NCBI RefSeq assembly: GCF_963853765.1
Contig: NC_088858.1
Coordinates: 1,054,001 to 1,118,000, forward strand
From: Magallana gigas
Lineage: Eukaryota
Reading direction: 5' to 3'
DNA: 64,000 bases
Below, piece by piece: positions 43,468 to 49,580 of the stretch; the first letter of the stretch is position 1, and each line of letters opens with the position of its first letter. The notes under the pieces were generated by a model. The model was not told where the DNA came from. It ran no database searches and worked only from the letters and a program-made list of their open reading frames with translations. The position numbers and the translations under genes are program-made.

Positions 43468-43583
43468 AGTAAACACTTGAGAATGTTACAATTTAAAAAT
43501 CCAGGAAAATTCATGGAAGATTTTGATCCAGAAAGAAGTGCTCGGGAGATGAGGAAGATGAATAGACGTATCTACAGAGAAAA
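43468..43583 (+). CDS. ARL14EP: ARL14 effector protein, exon 2
   Basis: cttgcag|SKHLRMLQFKNPGKFMEDFDPERSAREMRKMNRRIYRE|gtacgt. Confidence 0.85.
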
Positions 43584-43828
43584 GTACGTCATTTACTGGT
43601 TACCACAGAGATTCAATTTTCTTTTTATTTTATTTTGGAAATTTAAAGTATATTTTAATGACTTATCATGAACTCTATTCCTCATGTATGATTTTTGACA
43701 TCTGCAATAAGATAAAGTTTTAGCCTAACACCAGGGACTTTGATTTTGAATCTTATTAACATAATTTAAATATTTGATCAACTTATAGTTCACGTTTTTA
43801 ATAAGGAGAATGAAAGCGATTTCCCTGC

Positions 43829-43962
43829 AAGTGTGAATTTGTTATAAGCGTATTTACTGTATCAGGGTTTTACTGTATGCAGTGATGTGATAACTAAGTG
43901 TGAATTTGTTATAAACGTATTTGCTGTATCAGGGTTTTACTGTATGCAGTGATGTGATAACT
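43829..43962. repeat. 67-bp tandem duplication in ARL14EP intron 2
   Basis: aagtgtgaatttgttataa...gatgtgataact occurs twice. Confidence 0.9.
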
Positions 43963-43987
43963 AAGTGGAGGTTGCTGTTTTCTTCAG

Positions 43988-44225
43988 CATCAAGAAGAAC
44001 CAGGTGTATGATGAGAACGGGATCCTGTTGGACAACAGCCAGGACCTGTGTGACTGCCTGGACCTGTCCTGTAAGGGCTGCCACTTCCCGTGCCCCAAAT
44101 GTGGCTCCCAAAAGTGTGGCGCTGAGTGTCGATGTGGCAGGAAGTGGATCTACGAACATGTGGAAGTTGAAGGGACAAATCTGATACTGAAATGGCCGCA
44201 GCTTGAAAATCAGAACAAGTGGTGA
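43988..44225 (+). CDS. ARL14EP: ARL14 effector protein, exon 3 (Cys-rich ARF7EP C-terminal domain)
   Basis: YDENG...DLCDCLDLSCKGCHFPCPKCGSQKCGAECRCGRKWIYEHVEVEG matches the recalled ARL14EP Cys pattern. Confidence 0.9.
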
Positions 44226-44997
44226 TGTACACAAAGCTCTGAACCTCAAGTCAAAATGGCAGCTAGAAGGACGCAAAGAAAGCTGGCGCTCTTTGAAATG
44301 GCTCACAAATTGAAGATCTGTTGAGAGGAATTTTATCTACAGAGGAGTACAAGAATCACTTTAAGGTAGATGCCTGATGTGAATTTTCATGCATTTGTTT
44401 TTGTGAACAATGTATTTCAAAATGGCCACTGGTTGTACAATGTCTGTAACATTTGAAGCATTCTTCAATACAATCATAAATCAACATCATGTTGTTTGTT
44501 ATCAATTTGTTTATTGATTATTTTTTACATGAGTTACAAAAAATAAGAACAAATTCACATACATTAAACCGGAATGTCAGTCATTTTTAAGATAAGTATA
44601 ATTATATGAAGAAAATCTTTAGTACATGTACATTTATTTAAAAGTAAAGTATATCATACAAAATATAACTGAGTACATGAACAACCTCTTTGTTGAAAAC
44701 AGCATAAATTAATGTCTTGCAAAGCAAGACTTGTTATCCAGCTTTTTTCCACTTCAATGACAATTGCTGTATTGAAACAATTGGACTGTATTATCTCTTT
44801 TATTAACAATGGCTGCTCTATAAGATATTACTTAAGTGACCAAGACTACAGCTGAAGAACCAAATAATAAAACATTCACTAAGATCAACACAACATATAC
44901 TTCAAACAGTAGAGATCTATTATAACACATAAAGCTTCAAACAGTGGAGAACTAAAACATAAAACCTTGCATTGATACATGTCTGTATGTGAGCATT

Positions 44998-45104
44998 CTA
45001 GAATATTTTTATCAAAACGGCAGCACAGAGGAATGTAGTCAAGGAAACGGCCACTGTCCATGATGCATCATTGTGTGGGTTGCTTCCGTGGTCATCTGGC
45101 ACTA
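44998..45104 (-). CDS. GPI-type micro-protein, last exon (VPDDHGSNPHNDASWTVAVSLTTFLCAAVLIKIF*)
   Basis: Acceptor ttttcaatcag|, phase 1, GC-richer than flanks, small-residue stretch followed by a hydrophobic C-terminus; AATAAA downstream near 44509. Confidence 0.75.
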
Positions 45105-45735
45105 CTGATTGAAAACAAAACTCTGTCAATTTATATTGCTCCATCTTTTATGTATTGTGTAAATGTTTGGGGATTAAGTTAGGAATCTGATTAAAAGCAA
45201 TACTTTATAAGAATTCAGAAATTAAGTTCTATAGTTACACGTATACATGGTGTGCATGCAGATTTAAAATTAGTAATATTCTGGCCCTCAAGAAATAGAA
45301 TGGTTGAAAATTTTGAATGAAATTTAGATTGAAATAATTATGAAGTTTGTGATTGTTATTTGTTTGGATTCTATCTTGTGGTTCTTTCGATGTGTAGTTC
45401 GATGTGTGTGCTACTCAGGTTAATGTGATATCTTCGATAGTTATATTAGATGTATATATATTTTAATTATGATAGGATAGATATAAAGTATATTGTTGTT
45501 TGAATGGATATTTTATAGATTTTTAAACCTGTGTTGTTACATTGTTTGGATGAATGCTATAGTTCTGGTTCTGTGCCATCTGGTTGATTGACGTCTGTTT
45601 AATTTGGTGTTTGCTTTTGCTTTCTAATTGTTTAGCTGTATGCTTACTGTGCTATTTTCTTTGCTGTCTAGTGGGTGTGTGCTATCTTCTTTGCTGTGTA
45701 GCTAATAATGCAGGTTGGATGTGTGCATCTAGTTT

Positions 45736-45828
45736 GTGCTGCTACTTACTTGTTGTTTGGTTGGATGTGCTGCTACTTACTTGTTGTTTGGTTGGATGTG
45801 CTGCTACTTACTTGTTGTTTGGTTGGAT
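45736..45828. repeat. 31-bp tandem repeat x3, each copy containing a splice donor
   Basis: gtgctgctacttacttgttgtttggttggat x3; the minus strand reads caa|gtaagt in each unit. Confidence 0.95.
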
Positions 45829-45911
45829 GTGCTGTTGTTGTTGGCTTCCACATTTGAGATGAACATGAACAAGACCACAAACAGCAAAGTTTGACCTCTG
45901 AACTCCATCAT
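45812..45911 (-). CDS. GPI-type micro-protein, first coding exon (MMEFRGQTLLFVVLFMFISNVEA NNNSTSNQTT)
   Basis: Signal-peptide-like N-terminus ending VEA, then the donor a|gtaagt in phase 1, matching the 45104 acceptor. Confidence 0.78.
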
Positions 45912-45940
45912 TTACAGCAGTGGCGTCCTCTGCAGTCAGT

Positions 45941-46095
45941 TTAGAAAGCGAAGATAACCTAAAGTGTCAAAGGTTAGAAAGCTAAGATAGCCTAAAGTGT
46001 CAAAGGTTAGAAACTAAGATACATTTAACTTATAAAAGTGTCAAACTTAAGAAAGCTAAGTTTAGAAAGCTAAGATAACCTAAAGTGTCAAGATA
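45941..46095. repeat. 33-bp degenerate tandem repeat, about 4 copies
   Basis: ttagaaagctaagataacctaaagtgtcaaagg-like units at 45941, 45974, 46007 and 46062. Confidence 0.85.
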
Positions 46096-47049
46096 AATAA
46101 AATTTGAAAGTCAGGGTCAGCGAACGACATACCCTTCATTACACACTGTAAAGTTTTTTATCTACATTTTTCGGAAGAGATCATATAGGATATTTACAAA
46201 GTACTTAGTAATTTTCACGATTACGAGTACACTGTGTTCAGTGTGATCGAGATGTATTGTCTCTCTTGACAAGTTGTGTTAATCATATGAACGGGAAAAA
46301 AGTGACTAACATTTTTCTACAGGTTTATAATTGGCTCTACCGTGAGAAAAAAACATAGTTTGGTTTTTTATTAATATGAAAAAAAACAAGAAAAATCTAC
46401 ATAAACCTGCATCTTATAGATATGTTATAGCTCCAATTAATTATATGCACTGAACAACAGCTAACTGCTTCGGGGTACATGTACATCTTTTAAGAGTAAA
46501 GTTAGATAACTATCTACAATTCCAGTTTTCAATAAAGTATATCAACTTTAGAGAAGTACGTGAACTGATTTGAGATGGGAGAAGTTCGTAATAAATCTTT
46601 AAAGATATAAGATCTTTTGAAAAGATTTAATAAATTAATTCAATGTAAATTACAAAAAGCCCAAATAATGAATGAAAAATTCATACCGTCTTTGTAGAAG
46701 AATAAGATTCCGTGTCAACTCTACAAACATCAAGAGAATCTGAGGGGAATTGTGATAATAGGGGGATAAATAGGTGTTCTTTACTTAGTGTTAATTTGTG
46801 AAGAAACCGGCTGTTAGCAGCTGCAGCCTAAACAGATCCCTGTATTTACGTGAGTTATGTCCTCACGGCGTGGATTGTGTGGGGGCGTGTTCGATTGATT
46901 CCCGCTATTTTTTCTTTTGAATCTACCCCAAAAATAGAATTTAAAAATGACATAATAACCACGATTAATTTAATATCACAAAATAACTGGAAAATATGAA
47001 GCATGTATGTGTTGTTTTTTGATATTTGTCAATTATTTGTATTGCTTCA

Positions 47050-49580
47050 TACATTTTTTTCAAAACAAGCTTACAAAGAAAAAATTACCTCTCAAGTGTT
47101 AGATAAAACAATCCCTCCTGGAAGATGGTGGCGAATAGTTAAATCAATTACTAAATTTTCTAAAAAAACAAACTAAATCCCCTCCAATTAAATCTAATGG
47201 TAGAATTTTTATTCATCCGATTGACAAAGCTAATATACTCAATAATTATTTTGCAAATATTTCACGAGTTGATGATAGTTCAGAACCCCTTTTACCCCCC
47301 CCCCCCCCCAGGGACCTGGTCCCCCATTTTCTATGAACATATTTTGCATCACTGACCAGGATGTTGAAGATCAACTAAGAAATATAAATCCATCTAAACC
47401 TCCAGGACCCCATGATATTTCTCCACATATACTTAAAAATATTATCCCTTCCATTATTAAACCCCTTACAAAATTGTTCAAGTCATCATTAAGTAATAAA
47501 CAACTCCCTCATGTGTGGAAGATTTCTAATATCACACCAGTTTACAAAAACAAAGGTAACCCTGAAGAGCCAGGAAATTATAGACCAATCGCTCTAACTA
47601 GTATTTTATGCAAAATTATGGAAAAAATCATTTTTAAATACCTCTACAACTACATGTTAGAGCATAATCTTTTATCTAAAAACCAATCGGGTTTTCAACC
47701 TAGAGATTCTACTGTGAATCAACTTTTGGAAATATATAATACTATTATTAGCAATCTAGACCAAGGAAAAGATGTTAGATTTATATTTTGTGATATTTCA
47801 AAAGCATTTGATAAGGTCTGGCACAAGGGATTATTATATAAGCTAAAACAAAATGGTATCTATGGGAACATTTTAGATTGGATTGAAAATTATCTTACTG
47901 ACCGCGAACAAAAAGAATTGTTAGATGGATATCCCTCTACTAAACAATGTATAAATGCTGGTGTTCCCCAGGGCTCTGTACTTGGTCCATTTCTTTTTTT
48001 GGTATATATTAATGATATCACTCTTAATCTTGAAAATCAAATTCGGTTATTTGCAGATGATACTTCTCTCTTTGTAATTGTAGACTCTGATACAATAGGA
48101 CCTGCAATATCTTTAACAAATGACCTAGAAAAAATTAAAAAATGGTCAACACAATGGCTGGTGGAGTTTAACCCTAACAAAACTGTAAATGTTAACTTCA
48201 CTCGGTCAGATAAATCACATCCAGATATCTCCTTTGGTCATACAATAAACTATATAGACTGTAAGCAAAATCACTGTCATCTCGGACTAACTCTCCAATC
48301 AAATGCTTGTTGGTCTGAACATATTACAAACATTTTTGATAAAGCATGTCAACGTTTAAATGTTCTTCGTACTCTTAAATATAAATTAAACAGGGAGTCT
48401 TTAACTAAAATTTACATTTCCTTTATTCGTCCTATTTTAGAGTATGGTGATGTAGTATGGGATAATTGTACACAAGAACAGAGCAATCTTTTAGAAAGTG
48501 TACAAATAGAGGCTGAGCGCATCATTACAGGACTGAGGCGCACCTCCTCAAGACAAAACTTATATAATGAATTAGGGTGGGAAACGTTAAGCGATAGAAG
48601 GAAAAAACGCAAAGTTACACTCATGTATAAAATACTTAACAATTATACACCCAAATATTTGTATGATATGGTTGAACAGTGTCTCCCAGTCTCACACAAT
48701 TATTCATTACGTAATAATAATTTGTTTCACATTCCAATTACCAGAACTGTTGCATATTATAATAGTTTTTTTACCCTCAACAGTTAAATTATGGAACACT
48801 TTGCCAAACACTTTAAAATCTGCAACAAGTATAGCCAAATTTAAGCAAGGCGTGCAAAACAATAACCCTGTAGATAAAATAAAATCTAAATTATACAACC
48901 ATGGACAAAGAAATTTAAATATACTTCATTGCCAGTTAAGAAATTTTTCAAGTAACCTTAATGCAGACTTGTATAATCATAATTTAGTTGAATCATCAAA
49001 ATGTTTAAGATGTGGGTACTCCTATGAAGATTCATTTCATTTTTTTTCATTGTCAATTTTATAATTCTCAGAGAAACTCTCTGTTTAGATACATGAGTTA
49101 TGACATACCAATAGATATTAATATTTTATTACATGGTTATGATTGCTTATCTCTAGCAGAAAATATATCATTTTTTGACCAAGTTCATCAATTTATAAAA
49201 AACAGTAAAAGATTTTGAAATGTAAATTAACAATGAGTAACACTGTGTTAAATGTACTTTACATATACTAATTAATGAGCCTATTATACTATAACTAGTA
49301 CTATATATGTGTATATATATATATATATATCTATTTTCTCTTTTGTTCTTTTGTCTATCATTATATTGTTATTTATCTAAATCCTTTATTACTATATTCT
49401 TTATAAGTTAGTAAATGTCCATGTAAATCTTTGAAAAGTATATGATATTAGTATTATAAATATTTATACCTTGATCTCAGATGGAGAGAACTAATATAGG
49501 CTAGTGTTGCCTGCTGTTCAATCCAGATTCATTTATATACTTATATGTATATTTTTGAATAAAATATTTATTAAACTAAA
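47050..49580 (+). mobile_element. 5'-truncated CR1-group LINE (reverse transcriptase), frameshifted
   Basis: ORF 47333-48787 with KPPGPHDI, YRPIALTSILCKIME, DISKAFDKVWH, GVPQGSVLGPFLFLVYINDI and LFADD. The C-terminus continues in other frames, followed by a 3'UTR with aataaa. Confidence 0.93.

What the first reader, a model, noticed from the sequence alone, without database searches (positions are those of the whole stretch)
44998..45911. Hidden 68-aa CD24/CD52-like GPI glycopeptide gene
Seen: two phase-matched exons, absent from the ORF track, give MMEFRGQTLLFVVLFMFISNVEA|NNNSTSNQTTIVPDDHGSNPHNDA|SWTVAVSLTTFLCAAVLIKIF. This is a 23-aa signal peptide, a core of about 20 aa with two N-glycosylation sequons (NST, NQT), small-residue omega candidates (GSN, NDA) and a hydrophobic tail. 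A CAGTAG (NAGNAG) acceptor allows IV or M at the junction. Established: vertebrate CD24 and CD52 share this layout of a tiny glycosylated peptide on a GPI anchor. Inference: this may be an undescribed molluscan analogue (convergent; no homology is claimed) acting as a glycan-display molecule on haemocytes, gametes or epithelia.
Basis: partly seen in the sequence, partly recalled or inferred. Interest (0 to 1): 0.82.

Follow-up and report, generated by a model that had tools for sequence, protein, structure and literature searches.

The report
Unannotated oyster mini-gene, GPI-glycopeptide-like
The predicted two-exon, 68-codon reading frame lies on a real spliced oyster RNA and looks like a tiny sugar-coated, lipid-anchored surface peptide, but whether it is translated and anchored is untested and it has no known relatives.

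Summary
Assembled RNA contigs from three studies carry exactly the predicted joint 45812|45104.

- The RNA has four alternative non-coding leader exons, one of them inside a LINE remnant.
- Most leaders carry upstream ATGs; the longest has 18.
- Both splice sites of the first coding exon sit in minisatellites.
- There are three N-glycosylation sequons, not two.

The protein reads as a 23-aa signal peptide (VEA|N), then a 23-aa Asn/Ser/Thr/Asp/His-rich core. A small-residue block NDAS follows, then a 6-residue spacer and a 14-residue, marginally hydrophobic C-terminus. That matches the published GPI-signal rule.

The combination is rare by chance (6 of 20,000 shuffled transcripts). The coding part is also less polymorphic than its surroundings: one change, synonymous, against about 6 expected.

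No relative was found by Pfam, by two word searches, or by a 1.8-billion-protein phmmer run. A language-model search ranks CD24 first, just below its reliability guide.

Verdict: a real, unannotated, lineage-restricted oyster transcript. It probably (about 0.5) encodes a CD24/CD52-like GPI glycopeptide by analogy, not homology. A non-coding RNA with a chance reading frame remains a serious rival.

The parts
45812..45911 (-). Coding part of the first coding exon. It holds ATG-ATG, the 23-aa signal peptide (cleavage after VEA) and the first 10 mature residues with the three N-X-S/T sequons. It ends in phase 1.
   Evidence: It is covered by spliced contigs with no differences in X1 and X13 and one unplaced difference in X2 over 45812-45956, and no coding difference in L001.
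45912..45958 (-). 5' untranslated part of the same exon. The acceptor AG is at 45960-45959, and an in-frame TAA lies at 45914-45912.
   Evidence: Joints to 45955/45956 with a cut shift of +3/+2; L001 alignment 45958-45812; sequence.
45105..45811 (-). 707-nt GT..AG intron. No exon is seen inside it. Low-depth contigs (3-4 against 23-71) indicate unspliced RNA or DNA.
   Evidence: tables 2, 5 and 8.
45735..45834 (.). Perfect 31-bp x3.2 tandem repeat that copies the exon end plus the GTAAGT donor. This gives three candidate donors (45811, 45780, 45749). The second and third bring in an early stop (…TTSK*).
44998..45104 (-). Coding part of the last exon: IVPDDHGSNPHNDAS plus the hydrophobic C-terminus and the TAG stop. 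The tandem acceptor CAG|TAG lies at 45107-45102.
   Evidence: The single variant, 45061, is synonymous (Ser48 TCA>TCG).
44498..44997 (-). 3' untranslated region of about 490-500 nt, with AATAAA at 44515-44510. Contigs end at 44498-44509.
46808..46922 (-). Leader exon A, an internal non-coding exon (AG 46924-46923, GT 46807-46806). It has no ATG of its own.
   Evidence: (X1, X13).
46687..46796 (-). Leader exon B, an alternative (donor GTATGA at 46686). The contig ends in sequencing adapter at 46796, so this may be an RNA 5' end. It carries one upstream ATG that opens an out-of-frame 67-aa overlapping ORF.
   Evidence: (X2).
49891..50344 (-). Far-upstream leader exon inside the 3' end of a LINE ORF2 remnant, in the same orientation (donor GTAATT at 49890). 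With leader A and the two coding exons it adds up to exactly the 1312 nt of the X1 contig.
   Evidence: The overlapping ORF hits zf-RVT below Pfam's cutoff (23.8 bits against 27.5).
53001..53233 (-). Leader exon C, G+C-rich, spliced 53001|45958 (donor GTAAAT). Its upstream end is unknown. The same stretch, read on the + strand, is the 5' exon of the neighbouring Gly/Met-rich gene.
45941..46021 (.). 33-bp x2.5 minisatellite that contains the acceptor of the first coding exon and repeats it upstream.

Best explanation
This is a real, unannotated, lineage-restricted Pacific-oyster gene on the minus strand.

Shown: it makes a spliced RNA with a poly(A) signal. Several alternative non-coding leader exons are followed by two coding exons.

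Inferred: the 68-codon frame is translated, most efficiently from short-leader forms. Residues 1-23 would take it into the ER and be cut off after VEA. The core N24-D46 would receive N-glycans at N25/N26 and N30, and possibly O-glycans on its six Ser/Thr. The GPI transamidase would then cleave at the NDAS block, most likely at D46 or N45. It would replace the 22-23-residue hydrophobic C-terminal propeptide with a GPI lipid anchor.

The product would be a glycopeptide of about 22-23 residues on the outer face of the cell membrane. That makes it a minimal glycan scaffold working like vertebrate CD24/CD52 or plant arabinogalactan peptides, but unrelated to them in sequence.
For: RNA evidence:
- Exact junction in three studies, and an AATAAA hexamer 1-12 nt upstream of where the contigs end.
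- Fourteen RNA-type runs from seven studies hold 0.35-0.46 of the words of the 1.4-kb stretch. The exon share of that stretch is about 0.39. DNA-type runs hold 0.74-0.90.
- The protein was recovered independently as a called ORF on a Logan contig.

Chance:
- An ORF of at least 50 aa with both a signal-peptide-like start and a hydrophobic C-terminal end arose in 6 of 20,000 shuffles of the transcript.
- It arose in 0 of 1,520 shuffled-window ORFs and 0 of 93 natural window ORFs of 50-120 aa.

Constraint:
- There is one variant in the 207 coding bases, and it is synonymous and shared by two haplotypes.
- Against that, about 37 variants lie in about 1,200 non-coding exonic or intronic bases, including three indels in the 3' UTR.
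- Poisson P(<=1) = 0.012 and Fisher P = 0.03.

GPI layout:
- The small block N45-D46-A47-S48 is followed by a 6-residue spacer and a 14-residue tail, with no cytoplasmic extension.
- This matches the rule quoted in PMC11377618: four small residues, a spacer of about 6, and a tail of 9-24.
- Tail hydrophobicity is marginal, about -0.6 to +0.9 kcal/mol on a scale recalled from memory.

Other:
- The second ATG has A at -3 and G at +4.
- The nearest language-model cluster is CD24.
Against: - No ribosome, peptide or glycan data exist here.
- No dedicated signal-peptide or GPI predictor was available. The thresholds of my chance test were set after seeing the protein.
- The longest assembled form has a 616-nt leader with 18 upstream ATGs, several in good context. 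Leaders B and C also carry upstream ATGs.
- An ORF of at least 68 aa arises in 7.5% of shuffled transcripts, so length alone means little.
- The polymorphism contrast rests mostly on one divergent haplotype (X13) and on low-depth intron contigs.
- No homologue exists in any search, so there is no cross-species test of the frame.
- The Atlas recognition value of 1888 is below the 2300 that most real families reach.
- The scan looked at many windows, so a few chance look-alikes are expected genome-wide.
Confidence: 0.5

Rival explanations
1. It is a long non-coding RNA, partly started or fed by a LINE remnant. The 68-codon frame is then a chance product of thymine-rich sequence and makes no stable, functional protein.
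For: - Leaders are loaded with upstream ATGs.
- One leader exon lies inside a LINE ORF2 remnant.
- Both splice sites of the coding exon sit in minisatellites, which suggests a young, fluid locus.
- There is no homologue anywhere.
- Other frames of the same RNA hold 58- and 67-aa ORFs.
- An ORF of at least 68 aa occurs in 7.5% of shuffles.
- Non-genic thymine-rich DNA readily encodes hydrophobic segments (PMC7005711; title and abstract seen).
Against: - The joint signal-peptide-plus-tail layout is rare in shuffles, 3 in 10,000.
- Coding bases are several-fold less variable than the UTRs and intron, and the one change is synonymous.
- The frame spans the splice junction in phase.
- No snoRNA or miRNA that would explain a host gene was found between 43500 and 53500.
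Confidence: 0.3
2. It is translated but not GPI-anchored. The C-terminal 20 residues would then act as a membrane-spanning helix, leaving a type I micro-protein with a KIF stub inside the cell. Alternatively, the product fails quality control and is degraded.
For: W49-F68 is 20 residues long, enough to span a bilayer. Lys66 near the end could serve as a positive-inside cue.
Against: There is no real cytoplasmic tail. The segment contains Ser54, Thr56, Thr57 and Lys66 and is only marginally hydrophobic. A four-residue small block, NDAS, sits at the spacing expected for a GPI signal.
Confidence: 0.12
3. The main product is a soluble 12-residue secreted glycopeptide (NNNSTSNQTTSK). It would come from RNAs that retain the intron or use the second or third copy of the repeated donor.
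For: All such forms stop at TTSK*. Short contigs made of the repeat's words have depth 23 (X1) and 15+19 (X13). That is more than the rest of the intron, which has depth 0-4.
Against: No joint from 45780 or 45749 was reported. No contig with the 35-aa product is on record. The repeat depth could equally reflect copy number or other loci.
Confidence: 0.04

Closest known systems
Vertebrate CD52 (CAMPATH-1 antigen)
   Same: A tiny precursor built as signal peptide, very short Asn/Ser/Thr-rich mature peptide and C-terminal GPI signal. The mature human CD52 has just 12 residues and serves as a scaffold for one N-glycan and a GPI anchor (PMC6065011). The coding region is split over two exons.
   Different: No sequence similarity: nothing in Pfam matched at E<=10. 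The oyster core is longer (about 23 aa), has three sequons and an acidic/His patch (PDDHGSNPHND). CD52 acts through a sialylated glycan binding Siglec-10, and nothing suggests this applies in an oyster. Anchoring is unproven here.
Vertebrate CD24 (Pfam PF14984)
   Same: A small, heavily glycosylated protein with no cytosolic domain, held by GPI (PMC7379889). It is the top language-model neighbour, at 0.89 with 164/256 shared features.
   Different: The Pfam CD24 model does not match. The Atlas score and shared-feature count fall just below the tool's guide values, and only 1 of the ten best hits shares that family, which the tool reads as 'family probably wrong'. This is analogy, not membership.
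Plant arabinogalactan peptides (e.g. Pfam AGP40)
   Same: Precursors of 60-70 aa with a signal peptide, a glycosylated core of 10-20 aa and a GPI signal. A weak language-model neighbour, at 0.77.
   Different: These peptides are built on Pro/Hyp-Ala-Ser motifs for O-linked arabinogalactan (my own knowledge). The oyster core has only two Pro and uses N-sequons.
De novo / lineage-restricted small membrane ORFs from thymine-rich DNA
   Same: An orphan ORF with hydrophobic ends, flanked by repeats and transposon remnants, with no homologue (PMC7005711).
   Different: Its age and origin were not tested here, because no sister-species sequence could be read.

Membership tests
CD24 family (Pfam PF14984) | Sequence match to the family profile | tested here: not met
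   hmmscan against Pfam-A at E<=10 gave 0 families.
CD24 family (Pfam PF14984) | Layout: signal peptide, short Ser/Thr/Asn-rich core, GPI signal, no cytosolic domain | tested here: met
   Rule-based reading. The Atlas feature search puts CD24 first at 0.89, which is a lead only.
CD52 family | Sequence match to a family profile | tested here: not met
   Nothing in Pfam-A matched at E<=10. The phmmer run over 1.84 billion representatives returned only the query itself and three repeat-protein artefacts.
CD52 family | Sialylated N-glycan that engages Siglec-10 (PMC6065011) | not testable with these tools
   This needs glycan analysis and a binding assay.
GPI-anchored proteins (generic class) | Cleavable N-terminal signal peptide | tested here: met
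   The n-region is MMEFR. The h-region L9-I18 has a 9-residue Kyte-Doolittle mean up to 3.4. The c-region is SNVEA, with V at -3 and A at -1. This is heuristic only; SignalP was not available.
GPI-anchored proteins (generic class) | Omega region of four small residues, spacer of about 6, hydrophobic tail of 9-24 residues ending the protein (PMC11377618, citing Eisenhaber 2003) | tested here: met
   N45-D46-A47-S48, then WTVAVS (6), then LTTFLCAAVLIKIF (14), then the stop.
GPI-anchored proteins (generic class) | Positive call by a trained predictor (NetGPI, PredGPI, big-PI), or PI-PLC release | not testable with these tools
Translated small ORF (protein-coding gene) | Start codon reachable by scanning ribosomes | tested here: inconclusive
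   Leader A plus the exon-2 5' part (156 nt) has no upstream ATG. The full 1312-nt form has 18, leader B has 1 and leader C has 3.
Translated small ORF (protein-coding gene) | Purifying selection on the frame | tested here: inconclusive
   One synonymous change in 207 nt against about 6.4 expected (P about 0.01-0.03). Few haplotypes were available and there was no cross-species comparison.
Translated small ORF (protein-coding gene) | Ribosome footprints or peptide detection | not testable with these tools
   No Ribo-seq or proteome data are on hand.

The most novel reading that the evidence does not exclude
This is a recently born, Crassostrea-restricted gene, assembled from thymine-rich non-coding DNA, minisatellite-borne splice sites and transposon-derived leader exons. 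It has independently arrived at the minimal 'signal peptide, glycan scaffold, GPI signal' design of vertebrate CD24/CD52 and plant AG-peptides. That would make it a third, convergent origin of the tiny GPI glycopeptide, and a de novo gene whose product is a cell-surface glycan carrier.
Probability: 0.25. Interest if true: 0.6.

Novelty: new member of a known kind. Interest (0 to 1): 0.4.

Why it matters
If the peptide is made and anchored, it would be an invertebrate example of a minimal GPI-linked glycan scaffold. My paper searches found no invertebrate case described. These scaffolds are known mainly from vertebrate immune and sperm surfaces and from plants.

It would also show that oyster annotation misses small secreted-pathway genes. 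And it would offer a compact case study of how a young locus, with repeat-borne splice sites and transposon-derived leaders, acquires targeting signals.

If it is not translated, it is an ordinary lineage-specific non-coding RNA.

Tried and rejected
1. Word-indexed protein search with the exon-3 ORF and with the full protein found only the protein itself.
2. The exhaustive phmmer search returned three further hits (P0002-P0004). They are long tandem-repeat or ankyrin-type proteins whose many weak stretches add up. I rejected them as artefacts.
3. The metagenome scan gave one hit, L002. It is a 60% G+C contig matched only over the pattern DDHGSNPH, with a stop inside the match. I rejected it as chance.
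4. Pfam gave no hit at all.
5. I looked for a paralogue in the window with tblastn and blastn. There was none beyond the repeat copies.
6. I looked for a contig encoding the 35-aa unspliced product. None is on record.
7. An Rfam scan of 43500-53500 for a hosted small RNA gave only a sub-threshold CyVA-1 match (23.8 bits against 41.4), which is chance.
8. I first read leader A as a first exon with no upstream ATG. I corrected this once the 30-letter loose end was placed at 49891-49914.
9. I considered whether the contig at 44000-44486 was a longer 3' UTR of this gene. It is not. It is the last exon and UTR of a + strand ARL14EP-like gene.
10. Raw reads of X21, sampled at about 1 in 100, gave no reads on the gene. 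So there is no direct strand or level information.
11. Earlier-findings look-ups by sequence and by words returned nothing on this locus.

Full report
**1. What is in the sequence**

On the minus strand an ATG-ATG pair starts at 45911, and a TAA stop lies in frame directly before it. The frame runs 100 nt to a GTAAGT donor at 45811. It resumes after ...TTTTCAATCAG at 45104 and ends with TAG at 44998. As plain ORFs the two pieces are 35 and 48 aa, which explains why they are missing from an ORF track.

Two details were not in the finding. A perfect 31-bp x3.2 tandem repeat (45735-45834) copies the exon end together with the donor. This gives three candidate donors, of which only the first keeps the frame. 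A 33-bp x2.5 minisatellite (45941-46021) carries the upstream acceptor.

**2. The RNA evidence**

The single read-laying run used three contig-type runs from three studies and one raw-read run. X1, X2 and X13 each have a contig with the joint 45104|45812, which skips 707 nt with GT..AG on the minus strand. Contig depth on the exons is 23-71, against 0-4 in the intron.

Fourteen RNA-type runs from seven studies hold 0.35-0.46 of the sampled words of 44700-46100. That matches the exon share of about 0.39, while DNA-type runs hold 0.74-0.90. Contigs end at 44498-44509, just past an AATAAA at 44515-44510. The raw-read run, sampled at about 1 in 100, had no reads on the gene. So the strand is inferred from the splice sites and the poly(A) signal, not from read direction.

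**3. The full gene model**

The first coding exon begins at 45958 (AG at 45960-45959). Four different non-coding exons are spliced to it or lie upstream of it:
- **Leader A**, 46922-46808 (X1, X13).
- **Leader B**, 46796-46687 (X2). Its contig ends in adapter at 46796, so this may be a 5' end.
- **Leader C**, 53233-53001, seen in the Logan contig L001.
- **A far-upstream exon**, 50344-49891, spliced to leader A.

The 30-letter loose end reported found no match in the window at up to 3 mismatches. Its last 24 letters then matched 49891-49914 exactly, and a GTAATT donor follows. The pieces 50344-49891, 46922-46808, 45958-45812 and 45104-44509 add up to 1312 nt, exactly the length of the X1 contig.

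The far-upstream exon lies in the 3' end of a degenerate LINE ORF2 in the same orientation. The overlapping ORF hits zf-RVT below Pfam's cutoff. An ORF with a clear RVT_1 reverse-transcriptase match lies at 47333-48787 on the other strand.

L001 is an unstranded assembly. It fuses the reverse complement of the neighbouring + strand Gly/Met-rich gene's mRNA, poly(T) start included, with leader C over a shared stretch.

**4. Can the frame be translated?**

The in-frame TAA rules out an N-terminal extension. The second ATG has A at -3 and G at +4. Leader A plus the 5' part of the coding exon (156 nt) has no ATG. The full 1312-nt form, however, puts 18 upstream ATGs before the main one, all opening short ORFs of at most 32 aa. 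Leader B has one upstream ATG and leader C has three. Which form dominates is unknown. This is the main weakness of the coding reading.

**5. Is the frame more than chance?**

Length alone is not telling. 7.5% of shuffled transcripts carry an ORF of at least 68 aa, and the same RNA holds 58- and 67-aa ORFs in other frames.

The combination of features is rare. An ORF of at least 50 aa with both a signal-peptide-like start and a hydrophobic C-terminal end appeared in:
- 6 of 20,000 shuffled transcripts;
- 0 of 1,520 ORFs from shuffled window sequence;
- 0 of 93 natural window ORFs of 50-120 aa.

I set the thresholds after seeing the protein. The scan also covers many windows, so a few chance cases genome-wide are expected.

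Polymorphism gives independent, modest support. Across X1, X2, X13 and L001 the 207 coding bases carry one variant, 45061. It is synonymous (Ser48 TCA>TCG) and is seen in both X13 and L001. The 3' UTR carries 13 substitutions and 3 indels in 489 nt. All non-coding parts together carry about 37 events in about 1,200 nt. That gives about 6.4 variants expected in the coding part, with Poisson P(<=1) = 0.012 and Fisher P = 0.03. Most variants come from one haplotype, and the intron contigs have low depth.

**6. What the protein looks like**

- **Residues 1-23** are a classical signal peptide. The n-region is MMEFR. The h-region has a 9-residue Kyte-Doolittle mean up to 3.4. The c-region is SNVEA, with V at -3 and A at -1.
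- **The core N24-D46** (23 aa) has 6 Asn, 6 Ser/Thr, 3 Asp, 2 His and no Lys or Arg. It carries three overlapping sequons, at N25, N26 and N30.
- **The C-terminal part** starts with N45-D46-A47-S48, then WTVAVS, then LTTFLCAAVLIKIF, and then the stop.

This fits the GPI-attachment description quoted in PMC11377618: four small residues, a spacer of about six, and a tail of 9-24 residues. D46 or N45 is the likeliest attachment residue. G40 has the better-looking polar spacer, but Asn at +2 is unusual.

The tail is only marginally hydrophobic, about -0.6 to +0.9 kcal/mol on a scale I recalled from memory. From my own knowledge, that is typical of GPI signals rather than of stable membrane spans. 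No trained predictor was available.

**7. Relatives**

Every search for relatives came back empty:
- No Pfam family matched at E<=10.
- Two word-indexed searches of 5.8 billion proteins found only the protein itself, on one Logan contig and with no NCBI or UniRef entry.
- The exhaustive phmmer run over 1.84 billion representatives added only three repeat-protein artefacts.
- The metagenome scan gave one chance bacterial match.
- There is no paralogue in the window.

Absence is weak evidence here. Small ORFs are rarely called, and even the many oyster RNA runs that hold this transcript contributed only one database entry. At the DNA level the locus is held by runs labelled organism A, 'oyster metagenome' and a second species label, organism B, which holds 0.63-0.65 of the words. 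I could not read organism B's version.

**8. Comparison with known systems**

The design matches CD52, whose 12-residue mature peptide is a scaffold for an N-glycan and a GPI anchor (PMC6065011). It also matches CD24, which is small, heavily glycosylated, has no cytosolic domain and is GPI-held (PMC7379889).

A language-model feature search puts a CD24 cluster first (0.89, 164/256) and a plant AG-peptide cluster further down (0.77). By the tool's own guides both are leads only.

Membership in the CD24 or CD52 families fails the sequence test. The resemblance is functional and architectural only. The sialic-acid/Siglec-10 mechanism of CD24 and CD52 should not be carried over to an oyster.

**9. 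Verdict**

The coding and GPI reading is the best single explanation, at about 0.5, but it is unproven. A transposon-fed non-coding RNA with a chance frame comes second, at about 0.3. A non-GPI membrane micro-protein (0.12) and a truncated soluble peptide (0.04) follow.

It is a new, apparently orphan member of a known kind, the tiny GPI-type glycopeptide precursors. Interest is moderate.

The organism name (Pacific oyster) comes from earlier notes of this scan, not from a test of mine. Those notes do not cover this locus, and the scan had not found this protein elsewhere.

Noticed in passing
window 43965-44486 (+): A convergent neighbour. This is the last coding exon of an ARL14EP-like gene (Pfam ARF7EP_C, E = 4.8e-28) with its 3' UTR. 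Its contigs end at 44463-44486, only about 10-40 nt from the 3' end of the mini-gene's contigs on the other strand. Raw reads of X21 have their first mates on the - strand there, which fits a + strand RNA in a standard stranded library.
   Followed up: partly
window 52999-53233 and L001:722-956: The same G+C-rich stretch is used on both strands. On the + strand it is the 5' exon of the Gly/Met-rich 150-aa gene (GT at 53234, spliced to the ATG exon at 57353). On the - strand it is leader C of the mini-gene (GT at 53000, spliced to 45958). The Logan contig L001 fuses the two RNAs head to head. This could be a bidirectional, overlapping first exon or an assembly effect.
   Followed up: partly
window 45760-45822: Contigs of 61 nt, made only of the words of the 31-bp repeat, have depth 23 (X1) and 15+19 (X13, two alleles differing at 45790). 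The rest of the intron has depth 0-4. The cause could be use of the second or third donor, variation in repeat copy number, or another expressed locus with the same unit. It is unresolved.
   Followed up: no
window 47333-48787 (+) and 49807-52690 (-): Two non-LTR retrotransposon pieces lie between the leader exons. One is an open 484-aa reverse-transcriptase ORF (RVT_1, E = 4e-34). The other is a chain of decayed ORFs on the minus strand ending in a sub-cutoff zf-RVT match. The second supplies a spliced leader exon, with its donor at 49890.
   Followed up: partly
window 44283 (X2 contig): One X2 contig leaves the window sequence at 44283, with 29 letters that match nowhere in the window. This may be an alternative splice or a structural variant in the ARL14EP-like gene's 3' region.
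   Followed up: no
window 46917-46918: A two-base polymorphism (AA in the window, TC in the X1 and X13 contigs) lies just inside leader exon A. It made the aligner clip the exon at 46916 and hid the true acceptor at 46924-46923.
   Followed up: yes
window 43829-43967: A 67-bp x2.1 tandem repeat (97% matches) lies directly upstream of the ARL14EP-like last exon and just overlaps its first bases. A sub-threshold Rfam CyVA-1 match (43921-44023, 23.8 bits against 41.4) overlaps it and is probably chance.
   Followed up: no
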